Virus record (IMG/VR): IMGVR_UViG_3300023175_000005
Coordinates: 124,001-188,000 of that record
Strand: one strand, 5' to 3'
Length of the DNA: 64,000 nt
This document shows positions 23,615-56,957 of this stretch, piece after piece. A program made the position numbers and the translations under genes. The notes below the pieces were generated by a model, which saw nothing but the letters and a program-made list of their open reading frames with translations, searched no databases and was not told the DNA's origin. Positions within the stretch are counted from its first letter, which is position 1, and each line of letters starts with the position of its first letter.

Positions 23615-25719
23615 AAAATAAAATCTGTTCACGTGTATGGGATCATATTTATTTTTGGTGGTATCATGAATTTGAAATTGATCTTTCCCAAAAATCTGTA
23701 AAACACATAAACAAAAACAATATAAAATATACTGTTGTAACTTGCATTAACGATTTACCTTTACTTCAAAAAAGACTACGAGTAATAGGCTTACGGCCAC
23801 ATGGCAGAGCAGATATTTGGCCTGAGTTCTTCATTGTAAGAGCACATCAAGAACTGTTGAATAACAACTTCTTGTATGATGATTTAATATTACAAGACAA
23901 ACATACTTGGGATATATGGAAGCATCCTTTCTTATCGATGAATGGTAGAGAGCGTCATCATAGAGATGTTTTCATTGATGTTCTTGCTAGAGAAAATTTA
24001 ATAGATAAAGGATTAATAACATACCATCAGACTCATCGGAATGATGATCCTACTCAGTATTTTAAGTATCATGATGGTAGTAGATTGACTACAAATGATA
24101 GGTTTACTGAAAAATTATGTAGTTTTGATTTTAATGATGACTTTATCTATAGTTTCCTACATATTCCTACCGAAAGTTATACAGAAGGTATGACAATAAC
24201 AGAAAAGACAGCCACACCTATGTTATGTAAACTTCCGTTCTTAACTGTCGGTAGTAGATATTTCCATTCTAAATTAATGGAAATGGGTTTCGAAATATAT
24301 GATGAAGTTTTTGACTATAGTTTTGACAATTTAAAAACTGACGAAGAACGTATCGAAGGTATAGTTAAAAATATAAAATATGTTGTAGATAACAAACATA
24401 ATTTGCAAGGTATGTATGACACACTAAAGCCTAAATTACAAAAAAATGTAGAACACATATTTGACAAATACATATCAAAGTTTGAACACGTGCCTTCCAC
24501 TGTGCAAAATAGGATTTTGGAAATTACTGCACCAGGAGGTGTAATGGAAGGCGATGAAGGAGAACTTTTAACTTTAGCAAAAAGGTTTACTGATAGAAAA
24601 ATCAAAGCCAAAGGTCTAAAAGAAAGAAGAGATTATCTTTGGTATAATTATTGGTGTTCACATGAAAATGGAGATGGTTTTAATTTTAGACAAATTTTAA
24701 AAGATCTTAAAACTGTAAAAACTGATAAAGTTGTAATAGATGGTAGCGCAGAATGGGAACCATGGTTTGATCCAGAATATGTAGAATATGTGAATGCTAA
24801 TCCTAATATAGAAACTATTGTGATTAGTGGTTGTGCAAAAAATTCTTATTATGAAAATAAATTAAAAACAAGCGGCATAAACAGAATTAGAAGTTTACAC
24901 TGGTCGACTTTCTTTTTCCATTATTCTACAAAAACAATTCTTGATGCATACGAGGATTATAACACACCAAAAGATGTTAGAGAATATTGGAATATAGATG
25001 ACACAACAACAAAATGGCCTTGGATTTGTTTGCAAAACAGAGCACATTTACATCGTTGTCATTTAATTGATAATATTAAAAAATATAATTTACAAGATGC
25101 AGGTTATGTAACATGGATCGATGGCGGCAAAGAAAGACCAGACTTTCCATACAAATACCATGATGGTAAACAAATGACGCTAGAAAATGATACTTTTAGT
25201 CTTGATATGGATTCATACAAATTACCTGAAGAATATTGGCATACACTATGTGATTTTGTATCTGAAGCATGTTGGGAAACTATATTTGTTACTGAAAAAA
25301 CAATATATCCTTTGTTAAGTAAAAAATTATTTTTGGTATGCGGAGCACAAGGATTTCACGAACATTTAGATAAACTTGGGTTTGTTAGATATGATGAAAT
25401 ATTCGACTACAGTTTTGATAAAGAAACAGACTTAGCAAAACGTGTAGCAATGTATACTGAAGAAATGAGAAAGTACAGTGAAAATACTTTTTCTACTATT
25501 AAGACACACATACAAGAATACAATGAGTTGTATCATAAAATTGAATATAACCACAAGCGTGTGTTTGAAATCTTAAAAAGAGATCCTTACATGCCTAAAG
25601 CAGTAAAATATCAATGGTCAAGAATTGATACTGAAATACAAGATCAAGCATTGCCGCCGTGGCAAAAGTTATATTTAGAACTTAAAAAACAAGTGATACG
25701 TGCGAGAAAAGAATTATGA
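23554..25719 (+). CDS. Two-domain putative glycosyltransferase (tandem GT10-like TEK domains)
   Basis: Two copies of N.R...HR...TEKT..P.L....F...G....H..L...GF..YDE.FDYSFD. Confidence 0.5.
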   Translation: MGDQEKVAHIYAWQYGNAELENKICSRVWDHIYFWWYHEFEIDLSQKSVKHINKNNIKYTVVTCINDLPLLQKRLRVIGLRPHGRADIWPEFFIVRAHQELLNNNFLYDDLILQDKHTWDIWKHPFLSMNGRERHHRDVFIDVLARENLIDKGLITYHQTHRNDDPTQYFKYHDGSRLTTNDRFTEKLCSFDFNDDFIYSFLHIPTESYTEGMTITEKTATPMLCKLPFLTVGSRYFHSKLMEMGFEIYDEVFDYSFDNLKTDEERIEGIVKNIKYVVDNKHNLQGMYDTLKPKLQKNVEHIFDKYISKFEHVPSTVQNRILEITAPGGVMEGDEGELLTLAKRFTDRKIKAKGLKERRDYLWYNYWCSHENGDGFNFRQILKDLKTVKTDKVVIDGSAEWEPWFDPEYVEYVNANPNIETIVISGCAKNSYYENKLKTSGINRIRSLHWSTFFFHYSTKTILDAYEDYNTPKDVREYWNIDDTTTKWPWICLQNRAHLHRCHLIDNIKKYNLQDAGYVTWIDGGKERPDFPYKYHDGKQMTLENDTFSLDMDSYKLPEEYWHTLCDFVSEACWETIFVTEKTIYPLLSKKLFLVCGAQGFHEHLDKLGFVRYDEIFDYSFDKETDLAKRVAMYTEEMRKYSENTFSTIKTHIQEYNELYHKIEYNHKRVFEILKRDPYMPKAVKYQWSRIDTEIQDQALPPWQKLYLELKKQVIRARKEL

Positions 25720-26891
25720 AAAAAGTAGCAATGATAGGATGCGGCAAATTAGGACAAGATTGTGCCGAAGTAATGGCAACACATTATGATGTTGTAGGTT
25801 ATGATGTTGCAAAGCGGACACCGCGAAACTTTTCTATGTGTCAAACTATAAAAGACGCAGTTACAGATACAAATATAATTTTTGTTGCAGTGCCCACACC
25901 ACACGAAGCACAATATGGAGGCGAGACTCCTACTAGTCATTTGCCTAATAAAGATTTTGACTATAGTATTGTTGAATCTGTGTTACGTAAAATTAACAAG
26001 CATGTAAACAAATCACAGTTAGTTGTGCTTATTAGTACAGTTCTTCCTGGTACAACTAGAAATAGATTTATCAAACTAATAAAAAATGCACGTTTTGTTT
26101 ACAATCCTTACTTAATAGCAATGGGTACAATTAAATGGGACATGGTAAATCCTGAAATGGTTATTATTGGCACTGAAGACGGTAGCACTACAGATGATGC
26201 AAAAGAGTTGATCGACTTTTATAAGCCTATAATGCAAAACAATCCTAGATATGAAATAGGCACATGGGATGAAGCAGAAGCTATAAAAATATTTTACAAT
26301 ACGTTTATCAGTACTAAACTAAGTTTAGTTAATATGATACAAGATGTTGCTGAAACAAGTGGTAATATTAATGTTGATGTTGTTACAGAAGCCCTTGCAA
26401 AAAGCACATACCGAATTATGGGGCCAGGCTATATGCAAGCAGGTATGGGAGACGGAGGCGCATGTCATCCTAGAGATAATATTGCTTTACGATATCTAGC
26501 ACAACGGTTAGACTTAGGTTATGATTTGTTTGATAGTATTATGACTGCAAGAGAAGTACAAGCCAAAAGAATGGCACAGAGATTGATTAGAGAAGGTAAT
26601 GATATTTGTATTGTAGGAAAAGCCTATAAGCCAGGAGTTTATTACACTATAGGCAGTAGTAGTATGCTAGTAGGACATTATGTAGAAGAATTAGGAGGGT
26701 CTCTAACTTATTATGACATCAACACAGGAGATACGGTATTTCCTAAAGCAGATGTATATCTAATAGGTTATTGGGAACAGTATGTAGAAGAAATTGAATG
26801 GCCGCTTGGGTCTACAGTAGTAGATCCTTGGAGGAAACTTAGAGATTCAAACGAATTCAAAGTTGTACATTACGGTAACACACGGAGTTAA
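25716..26891 (+). CDS. UDP-glucose/GDP-mannose 6-dehydrogenase family protein
   Basis: GCGKLG, FVAVPTP, STVLPGT, YNP, EAEAIK..YN and catalytic GGACHPRD; G.AYKP. Confidence 0.85.
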   Translation: MKKVAMIGCGKLGQDCAEVMATHYDVVGYDVAKRTPRNFSMCQTIKDAVTDTNIIFVAVPTPHEAQYGGETPTSHLPNKDFDYSIVESVLRKINKHVNKSQLVVLISTVLPGTTRNRFIKLIKNARFVYNPYLIAMGTIKWDMVNPEMVIIGTEDGSTTDDAKELIDFYKPIMQNNPRYEIGTWDEAEAIKIFYNTFISTKLSLVNMIQDVAETSGNINVDVVTEALAKSTYRIMGPGYMQAGMGDGGACHPRDNIALRYLAQRLDLGYDLFDSIMTAREVQAKRMAQRLIREGNDICIVGKAYKPGVYYTIGSSSMLVGHYVEELGGSLTYYDINTGDTVFPKADVYLIGYWEQYVEEIEWPLGSTVVDPWRKLRDSNEFKVVHYGNTRS

Positions 26892-26898
26892 ATATTGC

Positions 26899-27639
26899 AT
26901 GGAACTAGTAACACATCTTAAAACAACATATCCAAACATTAAAAAATTAAATTATGAATTTGTAGGAACACCGCCATATCCTATGATTACATTAGACAAT
27001 TTTTTGCCAGAATCAATGGCAAAAGCAATGGAACTTGAGTGCGAAAGCATACCAGAATTCCATTGGAAAGAATTTACCCGTCGCGATAGTTATATGCGTG
27101 AACTTACAAATTTAGAGGTAGCACCTGTAGCACAAAATTTTACAAATCAAATGCACAGTCAAGCAGGTATGCAATGGTTGATTAAACTTACTGGTATTAA
27201 GGATCTTATTCCTGATCCTTATATTGTAGGTGCAGGTTATAGTAGAAGTTATCCAGGATGTAAATTATCAATCCATACAGATTTTAACTGGAATGATACA
27301 ATTAAAGTACATCGTATGCTGAGTATGATAATTTATCTAGGATCGGATTGGGAAGAAGAATGGGGCGGCCATTTACATTTCAATGACTTCAACAATAAAG
27401 GTCCTGTACAAAAAGTTGCACCAATGTTTAATAGAGCAATTATTTGGAGACACCATGAAAGAGGGTTCCATGGGTTTCCTGATGCACTAGCATGTCCTGA
27501 AGGGCGTACAAGAAATGCATTTAGATTGTTCTTTTACGTAAGCAATGCAAAACACGATGATGAGAATTTACCTCATCGTAGTTTGTATTGGTTTGATGAA
27601 GAAACAGGCGAACCCTATGATATTACAACTGAAAGATAG
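26899..27639 (+). CDS. Fe(II)/2-oxoglutarate oxygenase (prolyl-hydroxylase-like)
   Basis: HTD...IIYL..DW.EEWGG.L...P.FNR......HG......R. ATG 26899 preferred over the upstream alternative start. Confidence 0.8.
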   Translation: MELVTHLKTTYPNIKKLNYEFVGTPPYPMITLDNFLPESMAKAMELECESIPEFHWKEFTRRDSYMRELTNLEVAPVAQNFTNQMHSQAGMQWLIKLTGIKDLIPDPYIVGAGYSRSYPGCKLSIHTDFNWNDTIKVHRMLSMIIYLGSDWEEEWGGHLHFNDFNNKGPVQKVAPMFNRAIIWRHHERGFHGFPDALACPEGRTRNAFRLFFYVSNAKHDDENLPHRSLYWFDEETGEPYDITTER

Positions 27640-28267
27640 AACTGTAGAGTTAAACGATCCTTGGGATGCAGTCACAGTATTTGAAGATAGACTAGCAGAA
27701 TATGCTGGATCTAAATATGCAGTATGTGTTGATAGTTGTAGTAATTCAATGTTTCTTTGTATGAAATACTTAGGCGTAACAGGTCAAACAATTACATTGC
27801 CTGCACATACATATTCAAGCACACCAATGCAGTGTATTCACGCAGGTAATAAAATTAAATTTATTGATAAAGAATGGAGTGGTGATTATTTTTTAGATCC
27901 TACTCCTATTGTTGACGGAGCAACTAGATTCCGTAAAGGAATGTATATACCTGAGTCATATTATTGTGTAAGTTTTCATCATAGAAAAACACTTAAATTA
28001 GGTAAAGGTGGAGTAATACTAACAGATGACATAGACTTTGTAGAATGGTGCCGTCCTATGATTTATGATGGGCGCCACAAATATGTTAGACATGAAGATG
28101 ACGATTATAGTTGTATAGGCTATCATATGTATATGACTCCAGAAGAAGCCATAAGAGGTATTACACTCTTTGAAGAATTAGGACCAGATAATCCTGATAC
28201 AGGTTCTAGTACAACATACAAAGATTTACGAAAACAGAAAGTATTTGACGAGTATAGAGATGAGTAA
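27617..28267 (+). CDS. Short DegT/DnrJ/EryC1/StrS-family PLP aminotransferase
   Basis: FE..LAEY.GSKYAV.V.SC, P..TY, VDGA and SFHHRKTLKLGKGG.I.TDD with the PLP Lys. Only ~216 aa. Confidence 0.75.
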   Translation: MILQLKDRTVELNDPWDAVTVFEDRLAEYAGSKYAVCVDSCSNSMFLCMKYLGVTGQTITLPAHTYSSTPMQCIHAGNKIKFIDKEWSGDYFLDPTPIVDGATRFRKGMYIPESYYCVSFHHRKTLKLGKGGVILTDDIDFVEWCRPMIYDGRHKYVRHEDDDYSCIGYHMYMTPEEAIRGITLFEELGPDNPDTGSSTTYKDLRKQKVFDEYRDE

Positions 28268-29303
28268 AATAAACGCAAACACAGAATGGGGCACACTTAA
28301 AGAAGTAATTTTAGGTAATGCAGAGTGGGCTCAAGTTCCTAGGATCAAAAACAAAGATATACATTGTGTTGACTATGCTAACATAGATGATTTATCCGAC
28401 ATGCCGGGCGGGCAATATCCAGAAGATGTTATTAACGAAACTATAGAAGACTTAAACGTGTTTCAAAAACAACTTGAAGACATTGGTGTAAAAGTCATGC
28501 GTCCTACAAAGTTTAATCATGGAGTTACACACATGTCTCCTGATTGGTCTACTGATGCATACTATAGTTATTGTCCACGTGATAGTGTGCTTACTATTGG
28601 TGATATGCTTATCGAAACTCCTATGCCTCTTAGAAGTAGATATTTTGAAACATTTGGTATGAGAAGTATTTTCAAAGAGTATTTTGTAAACGGCAGTAGA
28701 TGGATTGCAGCACCTAAGCCTAGATTACCAGATAAACTTTATGATAGATCAGATCTAAATGCTCCTACACTTACTGAATATGAACCAGCATTTGATGCTG
28801 CTAACTGTGTAAAGATAGGTAAAGATATATTATATCTTGTTTCAAACAGCGGAAACAAAATGGGCGCACGGTGGCTACAAAGTACACTTGGTGAAAAGTA
28901 TACAGTGCATATGTTAGAAAACGTGTATGCATATGTACATTTAGATACTAGTATTATGCCATTGGCACCTGGTAAAGTATTATTAAATTCTGAAAGAGTA
29001 AAAGAAGAACAACTACCTGACATATTCAACAAGTGGGAAAAAATATGGGCACCTGAACCACATGAAACACAGGTTATGCATGATTGGGCACCTGCAAGTC
29101 CTTGGCTAGGAATGAATATTTTAAGTTTAAGTGAATCTTTAGTTGCCGTTGAAGAAAATCAACATAGTTTAACAAAAACTTTAGAAAATTCAGGCTTTGA
29201 TGTTATGCACGTAAAGATGAGACATTGTCGAACACTAAGCGGCGGCCCCCATTGTGTTACACTTGATACAGTTAGAGAGGATGAATATGCAGACTATCGA
29301 TAA
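28260..29303 (+). CDS. Amidinotransferase (glycine/inosamine-phosphate amidinotransferase family)
   Basis: EWG.LKEVI.G, CPRD, R.FE, FDAAN (Asp), HLDT (His) and GGPHCVTLD (Cys): full catalytic triad. Confidence 0.9.
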   Translation: MSKINANTEWGTLKEVILGNAEWAQVPRIKNKDIHCVDYANIDDLSDMPGGQYPEDVINETIEDLNVFQKQLEDIGVKVMRPTKFNHGVTHMSPDWSTDAYYSYCPRDSVLTIGDMLIETPMPLRSRYFETFGMRSIFKEYFVNGSRWIAAPKPRLPDKLYDRSDLNAPTLTEYEPAFDAANCVKIGKDILYLVSNSGNKMGARWLQSTLGEKYTVHMLENVYAYVHLDTSIMPLAPGKVLLNSERVKEEQLPDIFNKWEKIWAPEPHETQVMHDWAPASPWLGMNILSLSESLVAVEENQHSLTKTLENSGFDVMHVKMRHCRTLSGGPHCVTLDTVREDEYADYR

Positions 29304-30177
29304 AGCAATTATTGGCTTAGGTTGTAGTTGGACACAGGGCGAAGGCGGCTATACAGAAGAAACATGGAAGAAACACAACGGAAAGATGAATTTTCCTATG
29401 GATCAAAGCACAGACCTTATTCCTATGGAATGGGAAAACAGTTGGGTTAATGTATTAGCAAGGGATCATTTTACGGATTATACAGCAGTTAATTTAGGTC
29501 AGCGAGGTATAGGTAACAGAGCAGCAGCAAGGTGTTTGTACTTGACAGATATAGATTGGGATGCAATGGAAGATTGCATTATTGTGTTTATGCTAAGTGG
29601 ATACGAACGTTTTGATTTTTTTAGACAAGACATGCATTTTGACGAAGAGCCGCATTTTACAAGACACAGAGAACACCCTTATAAACGTGCTCATCATTAT
29701 AACTTTAATACTGTATGGCCTAATGATAGTGACAAGTTTTGGAAAGCATATACAAGAACTTGTTGGAGCGAAACATGTGCAAGTATGGAAACTCTATGTA
29801 GTATTTTAGAAGTGCAAAATTTTTGTAAGGCCTATGGATTTAAATTTGTTCTTGCAAATGCATTTGATTATAGAGGAAAACATGATTTAGAAACAAGAAC
29901 AGGCGGTTTGCACGATCAAATAGATTGGACAAAGTATATACACGATTATAGACATTATGATCAATTTGTAGATTTGCTAGTAGAAGCAGATGATTGGTTA
30001 CAAGGTGAACATGAAAGATCACAATGGTGGGATAGATATCATAATTTAGATTATCCTAAACAGTTTCTAACAAATGATATTCATCCAAATATCAATGGCT
30101 ACAAGTTAATGGCAAAAGAACTTGCAGAATTTATTACAGAAACATATGGCTTGACAACTGCAAAAAATCCTGTATAA
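29287..30177 (+). CDS. SGNH/GDSL-like hydrolase or acyltransferase
   Basis: GCSWTQG, NLG.RG.GN and DIHPN..GY..MA. Start chosen from the GAGAGG RBS. Confidence 0.6.
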   Translation: MQTIDKAIIGLGCSWTQGEGGYTEETWKKHNGKMNFPMDQSTDLIPMEWENSWVNVLARDHFTDYTAVNLGQRGIGNRAAARCLYLTDIDWDAMEDCIIVFMLSGYERFDFFRQDMHFDEEPHFTRHREHPYKRAHHYNFNTVWPNDSDKFWKAYTRTCWSETCASMETLCSILEVQNFCKAYGFKFVLANAFDYRGKHDLETRTGGLHDQIDWTKYIHDYRHYDQFVDLLVEADDWLQGEHERSQWWDRYHNLDYPKQFLTNDIHPNINGYKLMAKELAEFITETYGLTTAKNPV

Positions 30178-30178
30178 T
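30151..30178 (+). promoter_or_regulatory. Sigma70-type promoter TTGACA-16 bp-TATAAT
   Basis: Perfect -35 (30151-30156) and -10 (30173-30178) upstream of the AAGGA RBS and ATG 30197. Confidence 0.7.
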
Positions 30179-30196
30179 TTATAAAAAGGATTTCGT

Positions 30197-47949: not shown

Positions 47950-48388
47950 TTTTGACAGTTTTCAAAAAGAGTTTTTAGATTGGGTAGAAGAAAAAATAGA
48001 AAAGATTCGACCTGAAAATGGTTTTCCTATTTGTCCTTTTGCACGACGGGCTCGATTAGACAACAAAATACAATTAATAGACGGTAGAGAAAACTACCAA
48101 CATGACATATACCAATTTGACAGACGCAACTATGATATAGGTGTTGTTTGGCTAGGACCTAATGCAAATCTTTTAGAAGCAGAAAAATTTGTAAACAGAT
48201 TAAAGGGTAGAGAATTACTTTATTTTTTAAGTACACCTACTTCTGGGTATTTTGCTAAAAATCCATGTAATTGTATTTTTATACAAGACAAAGGAGATAT
48301 TCAAGTTAAGCGTAAATATCTTGCGTCAACAGAATATTACAGAGATTGGCCAGAACAATACTTCTTTGAGATAATGAATAATGTCTGA
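47906..48388 (+). CDS. Hypothetical protein with CPFA motif (DUF1415-like)
   Basis: W......P......ICPFA..AR and C-terminal Q......R..L....YY..W. Start uncertain. Confidence 0.45.
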   Translation: MQLTYNFTKVITKTDFDSFQKEFLDWVEEKIEKIRPENGFPICPFARRARLDNKIQLIDGRENYQHDIYQFDRRNYDIGVVWLGPNANLLEAEKFVNRLKGRELLYFLSTPTSGYFAKNPCNCIFIQDKGDIQVKRKYLASTEYYRDWPEQYFFEIMNNV

Positions 48389-50604: not shown

Positions 50605-51779
50605 CTGAAGATTTAAAGTGGAGCGAATACGATTTTACGAAAATTCCGTTCGATGATATCGTTAGCGTCGGCCAACGCACTATGCTATATAGAGATTTGT
50701 TTACTGTCTCTTGGCTTCTTGGTAGATTTTGTAATTATCGTTGCAGTTATTGTTGGCCATACGCTCGTAGCGACAAAAAAGATCATAGACCTACAGAACT
50801 ATGTTTAAAAACAATTGATGAAATAAAGAGGCAAGCCCGTGAGAATGGATTTAATTCTTATCATTTTAGTCTTAGTGGTGGGGAGCCTACTTTCCATCCT
50901 GGCTACTTGGACATTTTACAGCATTTGGCAGATGATGTAGATAATACAAATTATACAAGTGTACACATGACGTCAAACTGTTCACGTCCTATGCGTTGGT
51001 TTGAACAGTATGTAGAATGTGTAAAGCCATTTCATAGAGCAAGTATTACAGCAAGTTTACACACAGAACATTTAAATTCTACTGAAAAGTTACAAGACTT
51101 TGCAGACAAACTTATACTGTGTCAAGAGCATGATGTACAAGTTACAATTAATATGGTTATGGTGCCAGACTGGTTTGAAAGAGATTGGGAAAACGCTTTG
51201 TTCTTTCATGAGCAAGGTATCAACGTCACCCTTAAACCGCAGTCCGACCCTACGGCGTCGAGAGTTGTTGAAGGCTACACAGACGAAATGCTCAAGCGAT
51301 TATGGAACGGAATGCCACAAAGAGCATATACAGAAGAAAAGCGTAAATGGGCAGAACGTCCAAAGCCAAATTTTAGAGTAGATAAAGACGATAAATATTT
51401 ACATCAGCAAAAGAGTGTTCCTTGGCACATGCAAGTAGAGTTTAAAGACTCTAAAGGAAAAACTTGGTATATGGATCAAGCAGAACGCTTTAATGCTTTT
51501 AACTTTAATAAATTCTGCGGATGGGAATGTAGTTCAGGTTTTAGAAGCATTATTATCCGCGAACCAGACGGTTCTATAAAACGATCATATTCTTGTCATG
51601 ATGCTCCGCTTGGCAATATCGAAACAGGGTTTAAACTGTTTGATAAGCCAATGCCTTGTACAACACAAAGTTGTGTAAGTTCAGCAGATAGTAAAATACC
51701 AAAGCGTAGAGCAGGAGAAAAAATCCCGTTATATCCGGGAGACAAGACATATGAAGAAAGTTTATTTCACTCAAATTAA
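50601..51779 (+). CDS. Radical SAM protein with C-terminal twitch domain
   Basis: CNYRCSYC, SGGEPT and ASLH.E. C-terminal W.C.SG...I.....G...R..C....LGNI......C....C. Confidence 0.85.
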   Translation: MTEDLKWSEYDFTKIPFDDIVSVGQRTMLYRDLFTVSWLLGRFCNYRCSYCWPYARSDKKDHRPTELCLKTIDEIKRQARENGFNSYHFSLSGGEPTFHPGYLDILQHLADDVDNTNYTSVHMTSNCSRPMRWFEQYVECVKPFHRASITASLHTEHLNSTEKLQDFADKLILCQEHDVQVTINMVMVPDWFERDWENALFFHEQGINVTLKPQSDPTASRVVEGYTDEMLKRLWNGMPQRAYTEEKRKWAERPKPNFRVDKDDKYLHQQKSVPWHMQVEFKDSKGKTWYMDQAERFNAFNFNKFCGWECSSGFRSIIIREPDGSIKRSYSCHDAPLGNIETGFKLFDKPMPCTTQSCVSSADSKIPKRRAGEKIPLYPGDKTYEESLFHSN

Positions 51780-53604
51780 CAATGTTATTGCTGAAGCAAC
51801 TTTTCTGCCTCTCAGTGTTGCCTATGTTTGGGAATACTGTAGAGCCAATGTTGAAGGTTGGGAATTAGGCGACATTATATTTGAACGTGATACTGTAGAA
51901 AATTATATGGAGAATATAAAAGATCCTGATGTATTTGCAATAAGCACATATGTTTGGAATTGGAATATTAGCCAAGAACTTGCACGAGCAGTAAAAAGCA
52001 AATATCCTAATTGTTTGGTTGTAATGGGAGGTCCACAAGTACCATACGATCAAACTTGGCTTTCAAAAAACAAAGATATCTGTGATGTTATTGTTACTTA
52101 TGCAGGAGAAAGAACTTTTGCAGAAATATTAAATGGTAACTTAGATGCACCTGGTGTTATGACCGTAGAAAGTTATACACCTCCTAAGCCAGATAAAGAT
52201 GTTACTGATATTCCTAGTCCTTATCTAAGCGGGCTAATGGACAGCCTTATGAAGCCTGACAGACAATATAGTGCAATTATTGAAACCAACAGAGGTTGTC
52301 CATATGCTTGTACATTTTGTGATCAAGAAGCATTATATTATAATAAGATTGCAAAATTTGAATACGCTAGAGTTATAAGAGAAATAGATTGGGTGGTTGA
52401 TCATAACATTGACTTTTTGTATTTTGCAGATAGTAATGTAGGCATATTTGACAGAGATGTTGATTTTATAAAATACATTGCACATTGTCGAAAAGCGACA
52501 GGATTTCCTAGACAGATAGATTACAGCACTGCAAAACAACAACCTAAACGCATTGTAGAATTAGGACGTATATTAAATCAAGAAGCAAATATAAAACGTG
52601 GTGTAACAATTGCATTACAAAGTATGAATCCTGATACTCTCAAAGCTATTAAGCGTATCAACATTGCTAATACTAAATTAGAGGAAATGGTAGGAGAATA
52701 CAATGCAGCAGGTGTTGATAATTATTGCGAACTCATAGTTGGCTTGCCAGAAGAAACACTAGACAGTTGGATACAAGGTATAGGAAAAATACTCGAACTA
52801 GGTAGTGATCATGCTTTAACTGTACACCCCCTAAGTATTGTTCCTAACACACCTTTTGCAAAAGAGGAGTATAAAGAAAAATACGGGTTAAAATATGTGC
52901 CAACACCTGCACCTGCAGGTGGCAATACATATCCCGACGCAAGTGAAGGAGAAATTGATTTTGTTTGCCACCAAAGCAATAGTTTTACAACACAAGATTA
53001 TATAGATATGTATTTCTTTGCAAAAGGCATTGTTATTCCGCATCATTATCACGGAGTATCACAAGTAGTTGCAACATATTTGCAAAGAGAACATGACATA
53101 CCATTAATTGAATTTTACAAATTATTATTTGATTGGAGTAAAAATAGTGGTACTGTGTTTAATAAAGAATATGAAAATCATACAAATAGTTTAAAGGATA
53201 GTTTGTTTAATATGAAAACATGGGGCAGACCTATTGAGGGAGGTGACAATTTCCACTTCCAAGATAATGGTGCTACTGCTGCAACATTATATAAAAATAT
53301 AGATGATTTTTATAAACAAATTAAAATGCTTTGTTTAGCAAAATACAATGTTGATGTTGAAGAAGCACTAAAATTTAACAAACACATTTTAGATTTATAT
53401 GGTAAAAAAAGGAATGTAGAAACATTTACAAAAAATTGGCACAGTTGGTTTTTTGATGGCGAGCCATTAAAAGATGTAAACACAAGTGTTTCGGTTAAGC
53501 CAAATGTATATCATAGTATAACTGATCATGCAAGACATTTATTTTGGTATGGACGTAAAAGTAAAAGATGTTTTTTAAAATCTACGGAGGAAATTAATGA
53601 TTAG
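51751..53604 (+). CDS. Cobalamin-dependent radical SAM protein
   Basis: LPLSVA..W.Y, STYVWN, GGPQ, ETNRGCPYACTFC, DSN.G and LIVGLP.ET. Paralogue of 21650. Confidence 0.85.
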   Translation: MKKVYFTQINNVIAEATFLPLSVAYVWEYCRANVEGWELGDIIFERDTVENYMENIKDPDVFAISTYVWNWNISQELARAVKSKYPNCLVVMGGPQVPYDQTWLSKNKDICDVIVTYAGERTFAEILNGNLDAPGVMTVESYTPPKPDKDVTDIPSPYLSGLMDSLMKPDRQYSAIIETNRGCPYACTFCDQEALYYNKIAKFEYARVIREIDWVVDHNIDFLYFADSNVGIFDRDVDFIKYIAHCRKATGFPRQIDYSTAKQQPKRIVELGRILNQEANIKRGVTIALQSMNPDTLKAIKRINIANTKLEEMVGEYNAAGVDNYCELIVGLPEETLDSWIQGIGKILELGSDHALTVHPLSIVPNTPFAKEEYKEKYGLKYVPTPAPAGGNTYPDASEGEIDFVCHQSNSFTTQDYIDMYFFAKGIVIPHHYHGVSQVVATYLQREHDIPLIEFYKLLFDWSKNSGTVFNKEYENHTNSLKDSLFNMKTWGRPIEGGDNFHFQDNGATAATLYKNIDDFYKQIKMLCLAKYNVDVEEALKFNKHILDLYGKKRNVETFTKNWHSWFFDGEPLKDVNTSVSVKPNVYHSITDHARHLFWYGRKSKRCFLKSTEEIND

Positions 53605-54184
53605 AGTAGGAGATAAAATACCTAACATAAAGACTATGCACAAAGTTGGTACAACAACACGGTGGATTGATACTTATGAATTATTTGAAAACAAGAAAAT
53701 ATTGCTGTTAGGTTTACCTGGATTGTTTTTAGTCGAATACGCTGCAAGTCAAGCAAGAACTTATGATTTTTATTATGATAGATTTAAAGAACTAGGTTTA
53801 GACGAAATTTGGTTTACAAGTATAGATGACACATATGTACAACGTGCATGGATTAAAAACGATGGTTTGCAAAATATACAAGCGTTGCCAGATCCTACAG
53901 GCAAATGGGCAGAAACCATAGGAATGGCAGAAGATATGAGCAGAGAAGGTTTAGGAGAAAAGCGTAGTCATAGATATGCGATGGTAATAGATAATTTGAT
54001 TATGAAACATATGAAGTACGAAGATTTTACACACAACCCTATGACCTGTTTTCAAGTAACAGATGCAGATACAATGATAAAGTATTTTGAAATTATACAA
54101 ACAAATTATGAAAGGTGGAACGATGACGCAAGAGACAAAGTCGATGTTCTCGGAAGAGACAAAGTCAACACCGTACTGTCGTGA
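53597..54184 (+). CDS. Peroxiredoxin-5/redoxin-like protein lacking the peroxidatic Cys
   Basis: I.VGDKIP, ELF..KK.LL.GLPG.F, G.DEI...S.DD.YV..AW, LPD..G and G.RS.RYAMVID are Prx5 motifs, but PGAFTPTC reads PGLFLVEY. Confidence 0.75.
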   Translation: MIRVGDKIPNIKTMHKVGTTTRWIDTYELFENKKILLLGLPGLFLVEYAASQARTYDFYYDRFKELGLDEIWFTSIDDTYVQRAWIKNDGLQNIQALPDPTGKWAETIGMAEDMSREGLGEKRSHRYAMVIDNLIMKHMKYEDFTHNPMTCFQVTDADTMIKYFEIIQTNYERWNDDARDKVDVLGRDKVNTVLS

Positions 54185-54764: not shown

Positions 54765-55300
54765 ATTGGTATCACAGAAAACTTAAATTACAATACGATC
54801 CTAAGATTTTTAATGATATAGTAGAGTATGCTAAATCAAAAGATTGGAAACAAGGCTATGATCAAAACGGACTACAGTGGAACGTAGAAGAACTTCCGCT
54901 TGACGTTAAAGACTTTCCTATACTTGAAGAAATTTACGAAGGGTTTAACGCAGAATTTAAACGTCCGAGTTTCTTCCTAAGCAGTGTAAAGCCAGGCGGC
55001 CTAGTAAATCATATAGATCATCGCAAGTGGGGAAATTTTGGCATACCTCTTGTAGGAGACTTTAGCAAGACTCCTCAGTATTACTATGATCAATTTAATC
55101 ATCCTGTAGAAAAATTTGTAATGGATGCACCTACAATATTTTATACAAGGATGTTACATGCAGTGCCACGCAAACTTGATGATACGGAACCACGTTGGAT
55201 TCTAATGATGGATTTGTTTGATTGGATTGATAATTTGTTTAACAAAATAGATGACAACACAATATGGAAAAATACAGAACATTTTAAATATAATGGATAA
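54761..55300 (+). CDS. Fe(II)-dependent oxygenase-like cupin protein (Asp/Asn beta-hydroxylase-like)
   Basis: PGG...HID......IPL...T...HAV......R pattern. Confidence 0.55.
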   Translation: MNWYHRKLKLQYDPKIFNDIVEYAKSKDWKQGYDQNGLQWNVEELPLDVKDFPILEEIYEGFNAEFKRPSFFLSSVKPGGLVNHIDHRKWGNFGIPLVGDFSKTPQYYYDQFNHPVEKFVMDAPTIFYTRMLHAVPRKLDDTEPRWILMMDLFDWIDNLFNKIDDNTIWKNTEHFKYNG

Positions 55301-56957
55301 TCTATATTTTATACAAATCCCACTAACAAGAAGTATGGCGTGTTTACCTCAAGCAGTAGGCACTATCTGGGGATATTGTGAACAGTTTAAAGAAGTTACT
55401 GATAGATATCAATTAGCAGGTGTTTTGTGGAAAGATAATATCGATATACAAAATCCTAAAGTTGTTGCTGCAAGTTGTTATATGTGGAATTGGAAGGAAA
55501 CATATGATATTATAAAAAAAATTAAAAAAGAATATCCTGATTGTATAATAGTAGTGGGCGGCCCAGATCCAAAATACACAAGTGAATGGTGTAAAGATCA
55601 TCCAGAAATAGATGCAGTAATTGCGTACTATGGCGAAGAAACAATGCGTAAAATTCTTGTTAGTGATACTTTAGACTTGCCTGGTGTAGTAACAAAAGAG
55701 TTTAACAATGCATTAGAAGCAGAATATGCTGATCCAAAAGATATACCAAGTCCTTATCTTAACGGGTTTTTTGATACATTGTTAAAAGGAAATAAACAAA
55801 AAATAAGAGTAGTTTTTGAAGGAAATCGAGGTTGTCCATATAGTTGTAGTTTTTGCGACATAGGGCATAAAAAGTACCAAAAAATACAAATGTTCGATAC
55901 TGAAAGATGCTTGGCAGAATTAGAATGGATATGTAATAATAATGTTAGAGTAATTGATGTAGCAGATAGTAATTTTGGTATATTTCCAAGAGATGAACAA
56001 TTAGTAGATTATATTGTAGAGCAAAAAGAGAAAGGTAATTTTGACGGTACTTTTATGCCTACGTGGGCGAAAACACATGGAGAAAAAATTATTAAACTTG
56101 CTAAAAAATTACAACAAAGTGGTGTTGACGAGGTATTTGGATTTAGTTTACAAAGCACAAATCCAAAAACACTAAAAAATGTTAAAAGAAAAAATACATA
56201 CGATATAAAGGGCTTTGCTCCAATTATTAAAGATTTGTCTGATGCAAACTTAAGCTCTTATACAGAACTAATTTTTCCTATGCCAGGAGATACTATAGAT
56301 AATTTTAAAAGCGGGCTACACGAGATATTAGATATGCCTGCCCCTTTTCAGATGCTACAAGTGAATAGTTTAAGTAGGTTAAGTAATACAGAGTTCAATA
56401 CAGGATTTAAAAAACTTACCTGGGCAAACATAAAAGGCACAGCAAAACCATATGATAATGATGTTGTAGATGAAATATGCGTAGCAACAGATACACTTAC
56501 AAAAGGAGAGGTGTTTGAAGGACTGTTTTACAGTAGGTCTTTTGTAATTCCTATGTATTGGTATGGACTAGCAACATACATGCTTGATGAGAATTATAAA
56601 ATGCATAGCACTAGGAGTAAACTTATTAAAAACATTTATACTAAACTTTTTGAGATAAGTAAATTTCAAAAACTTAAACAAGAAATGAAAGATCATTATT
56701 TTAAAAGTATTGAAAAATACGATCATATAGGCTACCGTATTATTAATAGAGAACTATCAGACTATTATACTGATACAGCTTATAGCCATTTGTATTACAT
56801 TAAAAATAATATATTTGATGTGTTAGTAGATATATATCCTCAATATAGTGATATTATCAATAAAAATAAAAAAGATATGAAAAGCATAGATAATTTAGAA
56901 GATTGGCTACAAGACATACATGTTAGAAGGAGATTTACAACAGCATGGAAAAGTTGA
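55293..56957 (+). CDS. Cobalamin-dependent radical SAM protein
   Basis: LP.AVG..W.Y, SCYMWN, GGP, GE, EGNRGCPYSCSFC, DSNFG and ELI.PMPGDT. Third paralogue. Confidence 0.85.
   Translation: MDNLYFIQIPLTRSMACLPQAVGTIWGYCEQFKEVTDRYQLAGVLWKDNIDIQNPKVVAASCYMWNWKETYDIIKKIKKEYPDCIIVVGGPDPKYTSEWCKDHPEIDAVIAYYGEETMRKILVSDTLDLPGVVTKEFNNALEAEYADPKDIPSPYLNGFFDTLLKGNKQKIRVVFEGNRGCPYSCSFCDIGHKKYQKIQMFDTERCLAELEWICNNNVRVIDVADSNFGIFPRDEQLVDYIVEQKEKGNFDGTFMPTWAKTHGEKIIKLAKKLQQSGVDEVFGFSLQSTNPKTLKNVKRKNTYDIKGFAPIIKDLSDANLSSYTELIFPMPGDTIDNFKSGLHEILDMPAPFQMLQVNSLSRLSNTEFNTGFKKLTWANIKGTAKPYDNDVVDEICVATDTLTKGEVFEGLFYSRSFVIPMYWYGLATYMLDENYKMHSTRSKLIKNIYTKLFEISKFQKLKQEMKDHYFKSIEKYDHIGYRIINRELSDYYTDTAYSHLYYIKNNIFDVLVDIYPQYSDIINKNKKDMKSIDNLEDWLQDIHVRRRFTTAWKS

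What the first reader, a model, noticed from the sequence alone, without database searches (positions are those of the whole stretch)
25716..56957. Enzyme set mirrors aminoglycoside/aminocyclitol tailoring chemistry
Seen: a DegT/StrS-type aminotransferase directly followed by an amidinotransferase, plus twitch radical SAMs, B12 radical SAMs and GTs. Known: streptidine is made by oxidation, transamination and amidination (StrB1); BtrN is a twitch radical SAM sugar dehydrogenase; GenK and GenD1 are B12 radical SAM C-methyltransferases. Inference: the phage converts sugar OH to keto to amino to guanidino groups and C-methylates sugars, giving a cationic, glycosidase-resistant glycan or possibly a diffusible small molecule. 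I know of no described viral pathway of this kind.
Basis: inference. Interest (0 to 1): 0.8.

Follow-up and report, generated by a model that had tools for sequence, protein, structure and literature searches.

The report
Phage sugar-tailoring island rich in radical-SAM enzymes
An uncultured 256-kb salt-marsh phage carries a roughly 48-kb block of soluble enzymes (17 radical-SAM enzymes, two amidinotransferases, aminotransferase-like proteins, nucleotide-sugar enzymes and likely glycosyltransferases) that most plausibly builds unusual amino, guanidino and methylated sugars; smaller versions have been annotated in phages since 2010, but none has been tested.

Summary
A short DegT-like protein (27617-28267) overlaps the start of an amidinotransferase (28260-29303). 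Its best solved relative is streptomycin StrB1 (E=1e-96), and the Cys/His/Asp triad is kept. The window holds 17 radical-SAM genes: 9 of the N-terminal-twitch family NF033640, 3 B12-dependent and TokK/CysS-like, and 5 others. No Pfam glycosyltransferase lies inside 25716-56957. Just upstream, a predicted structure makes 18165-19472 GT-B-like, and 19469-20437 is a GDP-mannose 3,5-epimerase (E=2e-102).

I also found a second amidinotransferase (44020-45066). It sits in a conserved triad with a twitch radical-SAM enzyme and a class-I aminotransferase-like protein.

The sugar-tailoring logic (OH to keto to amine to guanidine, plus C-methylation) is therefore supported by context. Membership in aminoglycoside or aminocyclitol pathways is not. 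No cyclitol-forming enzyme was found, and no BtrN relationship was detected. GenK/GenD1 could not be compared.

The block is syntenic in other marine phage contigs. Its core is shared with Bdellovibrionota chromosomes, where it sits beside GT2 and GT-C genes. Smaller radical-SAM plus amidinotransferase modules were already described in Campylobacter phages (2010) and a cyanophage (2025).

Verdict: a greatly expanded variant of a known but uncharacterised kind. Product and acceptor are unknown.

The parts
15035..15976 (+). Possible GT-A-like glycosyltransferase (a lead only). Paralogous to the C-terminus of 31720-34284.
   Evidence: 34% identity to residues 625-814 of 31720-34284. The family has an invariant D-G-D motif. 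The nearest ESM Atlas clusters are auto-named 'Glycosyltransferase 2-like'. hhalign and the PDB profile search were not significant. Homologues occur in 17 Bdellovibrionota or phage loci.
15973..17355 (+). N-terminal-twitch radical-SAM enzyme (NF033640)
   Evidence: 316 bits against a cut-off of 170. 34% identical to 30197-31720.
18165..19472 (+). GT-B-fold-like protein, a probable glycosyltransferase of an unnamed family
   Evidence: AF2 mean pLDDT 92.8. All leading Foldseek PDB hits (ranks 1-32) are GT-B glycosyltransferases: OtsA, SenB, BshA, MurG, FUT9 (E 1e-4 to 1e-2, TM 0.37-0.54). Homologues are fused to Epimerase/GDP_Man_Dehyd domains.
19469..20437 (+). GDP-mannose 3,5-epimerase-like SDR
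   Evidence: PDB 2c59, E=2e-102 over residues 3-321. Pfam Epimerase, E=1.4e-42.
20434..21663 (+). Paralogue of the C-terminal half of the GT-B-like protein
   Evidence: 33% identity to 18165-19472 over 129 aa.
21650..23614 (+). B12-binding radical-SAM enzyme, TokK/CysS/KedN5-like C-methyltransferase type
   Evidence: TokK 7kdx, E=4.5e-81; CysS 9n1b, E=4.3e-49. KedN5 family at 255 bits, below the cut-off of 700.
23554..25719 (+). 721-aa protein with two copies of the domain shared with 18165-19472
   Evidence: Two separate BLASTP segments (residues 126-301 and 546-657) match 18165-19472.
25716..26891 (+). NDP-sugar 6-dehydrogenase (UDP-glucose/GDP-mannose dehydrogenase family)
   Evidence: Pfam PF03721 and PF00984. 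UDP-glucose 6-dehydrogenase 2o3j, E=4.8e-22. A GGACHPRD cysteine motif is read from the sequence.
26863..27639 (+). 2OG-Fe(II) oxygenase
   Evidence: PF13640, E=8.7e-13. It keeps this position in relatives L090 and L091.
27617..28267 (+). Short (about 216 aa) DegT/DnrJ/EryC1/StrS-like PLP enzyme
   Evidence: PF01041, E=2.4e-18. The PLP-lysine motif aligns to solved DegT aminotransferases. Short forms also occur in Bdellovibrio (219 aa) and cyanophage S-SCSM2R (195 aa).
28260..29303 (+). StrB1-like L-arginine amidinotransferase
   Evidence: StrB1 1bwd, E=1.2e-96, aligned almost without gaps. Positions Asp108, His227 and Cys332 are kept.
29254..30177 (+). Possible SGNH/GDSL-type esterase or acyltransferase
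   Evidence: Weak PHROG lipase hit (E=0.011). A G-C-S block and a C-terminal D-x-x-H-P block are read from the sequence. It keeps its position after the amidinotransferase in L090 and L091.
30197..31720 (+). N-terminal-twitch radical-SAM enzyme
   Evidence: NF033640, 302 bits.
31720..34284 (+). 854-aa virus-only protein whose C-terminal domain resembles 15035-15976
34271..35179 (+). Protein with a Rossmann, class-I-methyltransferase-like C-terminal domain (inferred from motifs)
   Evidence: Conserved G-W-Y-G, S-x-D-x-D and N-T-S-C-E-H blocks. Homologues occur in 24 loci.
35386..36453 (+). Radical-SAM enzyme (MoaA/NifB/PqqE-like core). It has three paralogues in the window.
   Evidence: 43-47% identical to Bdellovibrionota homologues.
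38167..39492 (+). N-terminal-twitch radical-SAM enzyme
   Evidence: NF033640, 234 bits.
39492..40416 (+). Radical-SAM/SPASM gene split over two frames (39492-40157 and 40102-40416)
40391..41815 (+). N-terminal-twitch radical-SAM enzyme, the best match to the family
   Evidence: NF033640, 416 bits. 59-61% identical to Bdellovibrionota homologues.
41793..42809 (+). Radical-SAM enzyme with a C-terminal SPASM domain
42785..43993 (+). N-terminal-twitch radical-SAM enzyme
   Evidence: NF033640, 253 bits.
44020..45066 (+). Second, divergent amidinotransferase
   Evidence: 27% identical to 28245-29303. StrB1 E=1e-25, with the P-R-D, H-x-D and H-C motifs kept. 49% identical to Bdellovibrionia homologues.
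45059..46279 (+). N-terminal-twitch radical-SAM enzyme, the middle gene of the triad
   Evidence: NF033640, 227 bits. The triad is conserved in L014 and L015.
46242..47198 (+). Class-I/II aminotransferase-like PLP protein (inferred)
   Evidence: Invariant S-x-x-K-x4-G-x2-R-x-G and D-x-A motifs. Five of 12 family members weakly match Aminotran_1_2, best E=0.0022. It lies next to a twitch radical-SAM gene in 17 of 18 cases.
48381..49454 (+). N-terminal-twitch radical-SAM enzyme
   Evidence: NF033640, 229 bits.
49441..50604 (+). N-terminal-twitch radical-SAM enzyme (structure modelled)
   Evidence: NF033640, 404 bits. AF2 pLDDT 91.4. 4517 homologue clusters at E<=1e-10.
50601..51779 (+). Radical-SAM enzyme, the gene most conserved with Bdellovibrionota
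   Evidence: 64-68% identical to homologues in Bdellovibrionota-assigned loci.
51751..53604 (+). B12-binding radical-SAM enzyme
   Evidence: 32% identical to 21650-23614.
53597..54184 (+). Redoxin/peroxiredoxin-like protein
   Evidence: PF08534, E=4.6e-13.
55251..56957 (+). B12-binding radical-SAM enzyme
58722..59639 (+). Class-I SAM methyltransferase
   Evidence: PF13489, E=4.8e-07.
59629..60857 (+). Two tandem paralogues resembling the cyanophage 2OG-Fe(II) oxygenase that precedes its amidinotransferase
60745..61953 (+). N-terminal-twitch radical-SAM paralogue
   Evidence: Pfam SPASM at the N-terminus and Radical_SAM after it. Paralogy to the other twitch enzymes.
61973..62716 (+). PP-loop ATPase (QueC/NAD-synthase-like)
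62685..63620 (+). Radical-SAM/SPASM paralogue of 35386-36453

Best explanation
The block from about 15035 to beyond 63620 is a phage-encoded, entirely soluble sugar-tailoring and glycosyl-transfer island.

Shown:
- It encodes nucleotide-sugar enzymes: a GDP-mannose 3,5-epimerase and an NDP-sugar 6-dehydrogenase.
- It encodes two amidinotransferases with intact catalytic triads.
- It encodes two truncated PLP aminotransferase-like proteins.
- It encodes three TokK/CysS-like B12 radical-SAM enzymes.
- It encodes nine radical-SAM enzymes of the uncharacterised N-terminal-twitch family.

Inferred:
- A hydroxyl of a nucleotide-activated or already transferred sugar is oxidised to a ketone. The oxidant is the 2OG oxygenase or a dehydrogenase in set 1 (25716-29303), and the twitch radical-SAM enzyme in set 2 (44020-47198).
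- The ketone is transaminated by the PLP protein.
- The amine is converted to a guanidine with L-arginine as the amidino donor.
- B12 radical-SAM enzymes add C-methyl groups.
- The remaining radical-SAM enzymes carry out further epimerisation, dehydrogenation or dehydration-type steps.
- GT-B-like and possibly GT-A-like proteins attach the sugars to an acceptor.

The window has no membrane protein, and the block follows the tail-fibre genes on the same strand with no gap. My best guess is therefore that the acceptor is a phage or host macromolecule modified in the cytoplasm, with virion proteins the first candidate. The acceptor and the final product are not shown.
For: - Amidinotransferase 1 matches StrB1 at E=1.2e-96 and keeps the triad. 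Amidinotransferase 2 also keeps the triad motifs.
- The short DegT keeps its PLP lysine. The 46242 family carries a class-I aminotransferase signature. It lies next to a twitch radical-SAM gene in 17 of 18 cases.
- GDP-mannose 3,5-epimerase, E=2e-102. NDP-sugar dehydrogenase.
- GT-B-like fold. Homologues are fused to NDP-sugar SDR domains.
- A Bdellovibrio operon reads twitch rSAM, UDPG dehydrogenase, SDR, short DegT, GT-B-like, amidinotransferase. It is flanked by YdjC, three GT2 genes and an acetyltransferase.
- A Bacteriovoracaceae array of 10 radical-SAM genes lies beside GT2, PMT_2 (GT-C) and another GT2.
- Cyanophage S-SCSM2R has its short DegT, a radical-SAM gene, a 2OG oxygenase and the amidinotransferase embedded among five glycosyltransferases. 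In Campylobacter phage CP220 the amidinotransferase and radical-SAM genes lie next to two nucleotide-diphospho-sugar transferases.
- Synteny is conserved in L090 and L091. The enzymes are 66-76% identical but the GT-like proteins only 35-56%, as in glycan clusters.
- No ORF has a TM-like segment.
- Contigs identical to the region occur in four metatranscriptomes.
Against: - No curated glycosyltransferase model hits any gene in the window. The GT-B assignment rests on moderate TM-scores. The GT-A one is only a lead.
- The DegT-like protein lacks about 40% of a normal DegT enzyme, so aminotransferase activity is unproven.
- The twitch radical-SAM family has no characterised member. Its best structural neighbours include peptide maturases (SkfB, SuiB) as well as nucleotide or sugar enzymes (viperin, BlsE, MoaA), all at TM <= 0.5.
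- No sugar-1-phosphate nucleotidyltransferase was found.
- No acceptor is identified.
- RNA evidence could be DNA carry-over.
Confidence: 0.5

Rival explanations
1. The island makes a diffusible aminoglycoside- or guanidino-glycoside-like small molecule. This would be a phage-encoded antibiotic or signal released at lysis or acting inside the host. It is the reader's second option, and the reading given for cyanophage S-SCSM2R.
For: - The best solved relative of the amidinotransferase is the streptomycin enzyme StrB1.
- TokK, CysS and KedN5, the nearest relatives of the B12 enzymes, are secondary-metabolite enzymes.
- All proteins are soluble.
- The S-SCSM2R authors call the homologous genes 'antibiotic synthesis genes' (PMC12801897).
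Against: - No hit to a family that forms an aminocyclitol (2-deoxy-scyllo-inosose synthase, inositol-phosphate synthase, cyclitol kinases) in any scan.
- No exporter and no self-resistance gene.
- Several GT-like paralogues diverge fast, and the bacterial homologues sit next to GT2 and GT-C genes. This looks more like a glycoconjugate cluster.
Confidence: 0.12
2. The sugars or other groups are attached to phage DNA. On this reading the island is a hypermodification system that protects the genome from host nucleases.
For: - GT-B fold enzymes glucosylate DNA in T-even phages (established knowledge).
- A PP-loop, QueC-like protein is present.
- Campylobacter phages that carry similar modules have heavily modified DNA (my own knowledge, not tested here).
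- A cytoplasmic acceptor fits the lack of membrane proteins.
Against: - No base-modifying enzyme was seen in the window or in the related loci: no hydroxymethylase, DpdA/TGT, FolE, QueD or clear QueE.
- The same core occurs in Bdellovibrionota chromosomes beside GT2 and GT-C genes, which points to envelope glycoconjugates.
- T4 glucosyltransferases were not among the top structural hits.
Confidence: 0.1
3. The radical-SAM enzymes, B12 methylases and 2OG oxygenases modify amino-acid side chains of a peptide or of virion proteins. This would be proteusin- or RiPP-like chemistry, and the amidinotransferases would convert lysine or ornithine side chains to homoarginine or arginine.
For: - SkfB, SuiB and CteB are the best structural hits of the twitch enzyme.
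- Weak NCBIfam hits to RiPP maturases and to RiPP C-methyltransferases.
- The 2OG oxygenase is of the prolyl-hydroxylase type, PF13640.
- The block lies next to tail-fibre genes.
- An amidinotransferase and a prolyl-hydroxylase-like protein were found in the S-SCSM2R virion proteome (PMC12801897).
Against: - No RRE/PqqD-like recognition domain, no precursor-peptide gene (the genes overlap, and the only gap is 206 bp), no leader protease and no exporter.
- The nucleotide-sugar enzymes and GT-like proteins would be left unexplained.
- The B12 enzymes are closest to small-molecule methylases.
Confidence: 0.1
4. The genes are auxiliary metabolic genes that boost host Fe-S or anaerobic metabolism during infection and have no common product. 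This is the view offered for CP220/CPt10 and for the T4-like marine genome with 12 radical-SAM genes.
For: It was proposed in PMC2853527 and PMC5332604. A redoxin gene lies in the block.
Against: - The gene order is tight, overlapping and on one strand. Synteny holds across diverged phages.
- Gene pairs and triads are conserved between phages and Bdellovibrionota.
- No radical-SAM gene reaches the cut-off of any housekeeping family such as MoaA, QueE, NrdG or HemN.
Confidence: 0.05

Closest known systems
Radical-SAM plus amidinotransferase module of Campylobacter phages CP220/CPt10 (Eucampyvirinae; Timms et al. 2010, PMC2853527)
   Same: It is a T4-like phage island with five clustered radical-SAM genes and one amidinotransferase, 34% identical to 28245-29303. 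Two nucleotide-diphospho-sugar transferases lie next to it. The authors describe it as an interchangeable module of unknown function.
   Different: It is much smaller. Its radical-SAM genes are only of the 35386/39492/62685 type, at 22-30% identity. The stretch examined has no twitch-family enzyme, B12 enzyme, DegT or NDP-sugar dehydrogenase. It does include a PAP2 membrane phosphatase.
Cyanophage S-SCSM2R ORF302-310 (PMC12801897)
   Same: It has a short DegT-like protein ('AHBA synthase', 37% identity), a radical-SAM gene, and a 2OG oxygenase directly before an 'inosamine amidinotransferase' (41% identity). All are embedded among glycosyltransferases.
   Different: It has a single radical-SAM gene, no B12 enzymes and no second amidinotransferase in this stretch. 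Pfam-recognisable GTs are present there but not in the window.
Streptidine branch of streptomycin biosynthesis (StrB1 with a dehydrogenase and the StrS/StsC aminotransferases)
   Same: The logic is the same: oxidation, then transamination, then amidino transfer from arginine. StrB1 is the closest solved relative of 28260-29303, and the alignment is near-gapless with the triad kept. Two rounds are possible because two enzyme sets exist.
   Different: No cyclitol-forming or cyclitol-phosphorylating enzyme was found. The aminotransferases are truncated forms. One oxidation step may be done by a radical-SAM enzyme or a 2OG oxygenase. The context is GDP- and UDP-type sugar enzymes, not inositol.
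BtrN (butirosin) and other twitch radical-SAM sugar enzymes
   Same: It is a radical-SAM enzyme with one auxiliary-cluster (twitch) domain next to an aminotransferase. That pairing would make sense of the 45059-46279 / 46242-47198 pair.
   Different: Here the twitch domain is N-terminal (NF033640). BtrN was not recovered by the profile search or among the 50 best structural matches. No family member has been characterised.
TokK / ThnK / CysS / KedN5 cobalamin-dependent radical-SAM C-methyltransferases
   Same: The domain order is the same (B12-binding, then radical SAM). Sequence similarity is strong: TokK E=4.5e-81, CysS E=4.3e-49.
   Different: All three score below the NCBIfam KedN5 cut-off: 255, 192 and 177 bits against 700. 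The gene context here is sugar enzymes rather than carbapenem or polyketide genes. The relationship to GenK/GenD1 could not be tested.
Virus-encoded glycosylation machineries (chlorovirus and mimivirus capsid or fibril glycans; mycobacteriophage virion glycosylation)
   Same: A virus carries its own nucleotide-sugar modifying enzymes, aminotransferase and transferases. This comparison rests on my own knowledge of those systems.
   Different: As far as I know, none of those systems uses radical-SAM enzymes or amidinotransferases. Virion glycosylation is not shown here.

Membership tests
Amidinotransferase family (StrB1/AGAT type, pentein fold) | Full-length homology to solved amidinotransferases | tested here: met
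   28245-29303 matches StrB1 at E=1.2e-96 (residues 8-345 to 3-340), HsvA at 2e-68, SxtG at 2e-62 and AGAT at 2e-52. 44020-45066 matches StrB1 at 1e-25.
Amidinotransferase family (StrB1/AGAT type, pentein fold) | Catalytic Cys-His-Asp triad (StrB1 Cys332, His227, Asp108) | tested here: met
   All three columns are conserved in the printed alignments of both paralogues. The residue numbering is from my knowledge of StrB1.
Amidinotransferase family (StrB1/AGAT type, pentein fold) | Acceptor is an inosamine phosphate, as for StrB1 itself | not testable with these tools
   Only the order of similarity (StrB1 > HsvA > SxtG > AGAT) and the gene context are available.
DegT/DnrJ/EryC1/StrS sugar aminotransferases | PLP-binding lysine in the S-F-H-x-x-K context and the preceding Asp | tested here: met
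   SFHHRK aligns with SFHPRK of 9bgp. A V-D-G-A block lies upstream.
DegT/DnrJ/EryC1/StrS sugar aminotransferases | Complete two-domain architecture (about 360-400 aa) | tested here: not met
   Only profile positions 25-108 and about 173-246 are matched. The protein has about 216 aa. The same short form is conserved in Bdellovibrio and a cyanophage.
Aminoglycoside / aminocyclitol biosynthetic cluster | A cyclitol-forming enzyme (2-deoxy-scyllo-inosose synthase or myo-inositol-1-phosphate synthase) | tested here: not met
   No such family appears in any Pfam, NCBIfam or PHROG scan of the window ORFs. Several ORFs remain unassigned.
Aminoglycoside / aminocyclitol biosynthetic cluster | BtrN-type radical-SAM dehydrogenase | tested here: not met
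   BtrN is absent from the profile search against PDB sequences and from the top 50 structural matches. The twitch domain is at the opposite end.
Aminoglycoside / aminocyclitol biosynthetic cluster | GenK/GenD1-type B12 radical-SAM sugar C-methyltransferase | tested here: inconclusive
   The B12 plus radical-SAM architecture is present. The nearest solved relatives are TokK and CysS. No GenK or GenD1 sequence was available for comparison.
NF033640 N-terminal twitch radical-SAM family | Score above the curated cut-off (170 bits) over the full model | tested here: met
   Eight genes score 227-416 bits with near-full model coverage.
NF033640 N-terminal twitch radical-SAM family | CxxxCxxC radical-SAM motif plus N-terminal cysteines for one auxiliary cluster | tested here: met
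   C123, C127 and C130 are invariant, as are C76 and C79. C8, C26 and C27 are nearly invariant over 35 sequences.
Glycosyltransferases (GT-B fold) | Two Rossmann-like domains resembling solved GT-B enzymes | tested here: inconclusive
   The model of 18165-19472 is high-confidence, and all leading hits (ranks 1-32) are GT-B enzymes. However, TM is only 0.37-0.54 and E 1e-4 to 1e-2. There is no sequence-family hit.
Glycosyltransferases (GT-A / GT2-like) | DxD motif in a GT-A fold | tested here: inconclusive
   D-G-D is invariant in the 15035 family, and the Atlas auto-names point to GT2-like proteins. hhalign probability is below 1%, and the PDB profile search gives no GT.
RiPP biosynthetic cluster | Precursor peptide gene and an RRE-containing maturase | tested here: not met
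   There is no intergenic room except 206 bp. No PqqD/RRE domain appears in any scan.

The most novel reading that the evidence does not exclude
The N-terminal-twitch radical-SAM family (NF033640) and its partner radical-SAM enzymes are a previously unrecognised toolkit for tailoring sugars or glycans. The toolkit is shared between abundant marine and salt-marsh jumbo phages and predatory Bdellovibrionota. In this phage it produces a guanidinylated, C-methylated glycan that decorates the virion or another phage or host macromolecule. That would be the first radical-SAM-driven, amidinotransferase-containing glycosylation system of a virus.
Probability: 0.3. Interest if true: 0.85.

Novelty: new variant of a known kind. 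Interest (0 to 1): 0.68.

Why it matters
If the model holds, a large and ecologically widespread group of phages makes sugars with chemistry so far known mainly from antibiotic pathways, using amidino transfer, B12-dependent C-methylation and radical-SAM tailoring.

One radical-SAM orthologue alone has more than 4,500 sequence clusters in metagenomes, and the amidinotransferase more than 2,000.

The model would give a first function to the uncharacterised N-terminal-twitch radical-SAM family. It would also explain the radical-SAM plus amidinotransferase modules that have been unexplained in Campylobacter phages since 2010. It links phage and Bdellovibrionota surface or glycan biology.

Cationic, methylated glycans on virions, on DNA or on the host envelope would bear on host recognition, resistance to degradation and superinfection exclusion. 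The enzymes would also be new biocatalysts.

Tried and rejected
- Megablast of 49 kb of the window against GenBank phages found nothing. tblastn of the 1288-aa structural protein and of radical-SAM gene 50601 against the same phages also found nothing. The phage lineage and host therefore stay unknown.
- PHROGs, and a second Pfam pass at a relaxed threshold, gave nothing usable for most unknown ORFs. NCBIfam also gave nothing for ten unknowns.
- ESM Atlas placed the 854-aa protein only in virus-only unnamed clusters. For 37172-38170 it gave only a weak 2OG-oxygenase lead at score 0.80.
- The first attempt to scan genomes with the nine-paralogue alignment failed because no stretch was conserved enough. 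A closer alignment worked.
- The GT-A assignment of the 15035 family could not be confirmed. hhalign against a cyanophage GT2 and a CP220 transferase gave probabilities below 1%. The PDB profile search returned only spurious glutaminyl-tRNA synthetase hits.
- I considered an Ara4N-like route (Ugd, ArnA-type decarboxylase, ArnB), because of the dehydrogenase, SDR and DegT trio in Bdellovibrio. In the phage the only SDR is a GDP-mannose 3,5-epimerase, so I kept this only as one possible variant.
- I considered a 7-deazaguanine pathway because of the QueC-like PP-loop protein. The hit is marginal (E=1e-4 on the C-terminal 60 residues), and no partner genes were seen.
- One look-up of encoding contigs failed because I mis-trimmed a minus-strand ORF. 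I corrected it.
- No phylogeny against StrB1, AGAT, BtrN or GenK was built.

Full report
**Setting**

Every sizeable ORF in the window is on the + strand, and G+C is about 33%. The window is part of IMG/VR contig UViG_3300023175_000005 (256.5 kb). Near-identical and 95-96% identical copies occur in six other viral contigs. It is present in many salt-marsh metagenomes.

The first 12 kb encode tail-fibre-like proteins: a Phage Tail Collar domain, a cement-like domain and several paralogues. GenBank phages hold no nucleotide match to positions 1-50000 of the window. They also hold no protein match to the large structural protein. The phage is therefore uncultured and its host is unknown.

**Check of the observation**

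ORF 27545-28267 matches PF01041 (DegT/DnrJ/EryC1/StrS, E=2.4e-18). Its SFHHRK motif aligns with the PLP-lysine motif of solved DegT-type aminotransferases.
- This protein is short, however. Gene calls in relatives give 218-225 aa, and only profile positions 25-108 and about 173-246 are matched.
- The next gene (28245/28260-29303) is an amidinotransferase. Its best solved relative is StrB1 of streptomycin biosynthesis (E=1.2e-96, near-gapless over 338 residues). HsvA, SxtG and glycine amidinotransferase follow. The positions of the StrB1 triad (Asp108, His227, Cys332) are conserved.
- Radical-SAM genes are extraordinarily dense. Nine belong to NCBIfam NF033640, 'twitch domain-containing radical SAM protein', in which the auxiliary-cluster domain is N-terminal. 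Eight of these score 227-416 bits against a cut-off of 170. The ninth is assigned by Pfam and paralogy.
- Three more are B12-binding radical-SAM enzymes.
- Four form another paralogous group with MoaA/NifB/PqqE-like cores and C-terminal SPASM-like parts, and 50601-51779 is a further type. One of the four, 39492-40416, is split over two frames. The total is 17 in about 48 kb.
- The one part of the observation I could not confirm as written is 'GTs'. No curated family model for a glycosyltransferase hits any ORF between 25716 and 56957.

**What else is there**

1. A second amidinotransferase lies at 44020-45066. It is 27% identical to the first, matches StrB1 at E=1e-25 and keeps the triad motifs.
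2. That gene is followed by a twitch radical-SAM gene (45059-46279) and then by 46242-47198. The family of 46242-47198 has invariant S-x-x-K-x4-G-x2-R-x-G and D-x-A motifs. This is the signature spacing of class-I aminotransferases. Five of 12 family members weakly hit Aminotran_1_2, the only Pfam family hit by more than one member.
3. Upstream, 19469-20437 is a GDP-mannose 3,5-epimerase (2c59, E=2e-102).
4. It is flanked by 18165-19472 and 20434-21663, and 23554-25719 carries two copies of the same domain. The AlphaFold model of 18165-19472 is confident (pLDDT 92.8). All its leading PDB matches (ranks 1-32) are GT-B glycosyltransferases, although TM-scores are only 0.37-0.54. Several homologues are fused to an Epimerase/GDP_Man_Dehyd domain. 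That is an independent link to nucleotide sugars.
5. 25716-26891 is a UDP-glucose/GDP-mannose 6-dehydrogenase family member.
6. 15035-15976 and the C-terminus of the 854-aa protein 31720-34284 share a domain with an invariant D-G-D motif. ESM Atlas places it next to clusters auto-named 'Glycosyltransferase 2-like'. I could not confirm this by profile methods.
7. No ORF in the window has a transmembrane-like segment. The genes overlap or abut, with a single 206-bp gap.

**Relatives**

- The twitch enzyme 49441-50604 has 4517 homologue clusters at E<=1e-10. Many are 70-80% identical and lie on Tara Oceans and other environmental contigs of up to 347 kb. The neighbourhoods I looked at contain 10 or more radical-SAM genes.
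- The amidinotransferase has more than 2000 homologue clusters.
- In two diverged phage contigs the order from the epimerase to 34271-35179 is preserved. The enzymes are 66-76% identical, whereas the GT-like proteins are only 35-56% identical. That pattern is typical of glycan clusters, in which transferases diverge faster than sugar-building enzymes.
- Among 185,579 species-representative genomes, the cellular homologues are almost all in Bdellovibrionota. A few higher-identity hits in other MAGs look like mis-binned phage contigs.
- In a Bacteriovoracaceae chromosome, ten radical-SAM genes in a row lie beside a 623-aa GT2, a PMT_2 (GT-C) protein, an FAD oxidoreductase and another GT2.
- In a Bdellovibrio MAG there is an operon: twitch radical-SAM, UDPG/GDP-mannose dehydrogenase, SDR epimerase, 219-aa DegT, a homologue of the GT-B-like protein, amidinotransferase. 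It is flanked by YdjC, three GT2 genes and an acetyltransferase.
- The triad amidinotransferase-2 / twitch radical-SAM / aminotransferase-like is conserved in Bdellovibrionia. The aminotransferase-like gene lies next to a twitch radical-SAM gene in 17 of 18 bacterial occurrences.
- In a tree, the 40391-41815 orthologue nests inside a Bacteriovoracaceae/Halobacteriovoraceae clade with support 100/99. The root and the direction of transfer are not established.

**Literature**

- Timms et al. 2010 described, in Campylobacter phages CP220 and CPt10, an interchangeable cluster with five radical-SAM genes and a putative glycine amidinotransferase. They counted 11-12 radical-SAM genes per genome and suggested a metabolic benefit to the host (PMC2853527).
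- The CP220 record shows two nucleotide-diphospho-sugar transferases directly after that cluster.
- Nishimura et al. 2017 noted a T4-like marine viral genome with 12 radical-SAM genes (PMC5332604).
- The 2025 description of cyanophage S-SCSM2R called its AHBA-synthase-like (short DegT), inosamine amidinotransferase and radical-SAM genes 'antibiotic synthesis genes', never before reported in cyanophages. It also found another amidinotransferase in the virion proteome (PMC12801897). In that genome the genes are embedded among five glycosyltransferases.
- None of these papers gives a mechanism.

**Most likely mechanism**

The combined evidence favours a soluble sugar-tailoring and glycosyl-transfer pathway.

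- Shown: the enzyme families, their catalytic motifs, their conserved adjacency, and their association with nucleotide-sugar enzymes and with glycosyltransferases in bacterial and phage relatives.
- Inferred: in two separate sets, a sugar hydroxyl is oxidised to a ketone. In set 1 the oxidant would be the 2OG oxygenase or a dehydrogenase. In set 2 it would be the twitch radical-SAM enzyme, by analogy with radical-SAM dehydrogenases.
- Inferred: the ketone is transaminated by the truncated PLP protein, and the amine is amidinated from arginine.
- Inferred: the TokK/CysS-like B12 enzymes add one or more C-methyl groups. The remaining radical-SAM enzymes perform further tailoring. The GT-like proteins transfer the sugars.
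- The acceptor is unknown. The absence of membrane proteins, and the position directly after the tail-fibre genes, make a cytoplasmic macromolecule (virion proteins first, DNA second) more likely than an exported polysaccharide. The phage could also feed modified sugars into host machinery.
- Contigs identical to 25716-31700 occur in four salt-marsh metatranscriptomes. This is compatible with expression but does not exclude DNA carry-over.

The StrB1 analogy holds at the level of family and of pathway logic. The BtrN analogy does not hold as membership. The twitch domain is at the other end, BtrN is not recovered by sequence profile or by structure, and the nearest solved structures are generic radical-SAM cores at TM <= 0.5 (SkfB, SuiB, viperin, anSME, BlsE, MoaA). 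The B12 enzymes are closest to TokK and CysS, and GenK/GenD1 could not be tested. No hit to a family that forms or phosphorylates a cyclitol was found, so I do not file the island as an aminoglycoside or aminocyclitol cluster.

**Rivals**

Each of these is kept at low probability. The evidence for and against is given in the structured fields.
- A diffusible guanidino-glycoside.
- DNA hypermodification.
- RiPP-like protein modification.
- Unlinked auxiliary metabolic genes.

**Verdict**

The finding is real, larger than described and conserved. It is a greatly expanded variant of a phage module that has been seen before but never explained. The sugar-tailoring reading is the best supported (about 0.5). 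The guanidino-sugar step is plausible but unproven. The product, the acceptor and the roles of the 14 non-B12 radical-SAM enzymes remain open.

Noticed in passing
window 39492-40416: A radical-SAM/SPASM gene is split. The radical-SAM part ends at a TAG at 40155-40157, and the SPASM-like part continues in another frame from 40102. This could be a frameshift, a sequencing error or a programmed shift. The related loci I fetched end just before this point.
   Followed up: partly
Genome-contig loci L014-L083: Outside phage-like contigs, cellular homologues of the twitch radical-SAM array are almost confined to Bdellovibrionota, often with several arrays per chromosome. The phage 40391-41815 orthologue nests within a Bacteriovoracaceae/Halobacteriovoraceae clade. 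This suggests gene exchange between these phages and predatory bacteria, or a Bdellovibrionota host.
   Followed up: partly
window 61973-62716; L090 20261-20914: A PP-loop ATPase (weak QueC, NAD synthase, TilS and asparagine-synthase-like hits) is conserved near the radical-SAM genes in a diverged relative. It could be an amidotransferase of the type that makes acetamidino sugars, or it could be unrelated.
   Followed up: no
window 4746-12402: The tail-fibre-like proteins form paralogous sets. 4746-6815, 6817-8697 and 8734-10197 share an N-terminal region. 10225-11112 and 11131-12402 share a C-terminal region. All are strongly acidic. 11131-12402 gives an odd hit to the ubiquitin-E1 FCCH domain (E=7.6e-08).
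   Followed up: no
window 59629-60857: Two tandem paralogues (36% identical) resemble the small 2OG-Fe(II) oxygenase that directly precedes the amidinotransferase in cyanophage S-SCSM2R. Pfam sees only a marginal PhyH hit.
   Followed up: partly
L090 and L091 compared with window 19469-35179: Across diverged phages, the sugar-building enzymes are 66-76% identical, while the GT-like proteins (20434, 23554, 31720) are only 35-56% identical. One relative has an extra copy of the 23554-like gene.
   Followed up: partly
window 25716-31700: Four salt-marsh metatranscriptome libraries contain fragmentary, 100%-identical contigs covering most of this stretch at low depth. No silent control region was laid, so transcription is suggested but not shown.
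   Followed up: partly
window 50601-51779: This radical-SAM enzyme is the gene of the island most conserved with bacteria: 64-68% identity to homologues in Bdellovibrionota-assigned loci, and 77-85% to those on phage-like contigs. Yet it matches no curated equivalog and no solved structure beyond the core.
   Followed up: partly
window 47906-48388 and 57628-58719: The 160-aa ORF is 30% identical to the N-terminal part of the 363-aa basic protein, which carries a weak methyltransferase-domain hit. 54087-54764 and 54761-55300 are also weak paralogues. None has a known function.
   Followed up: no
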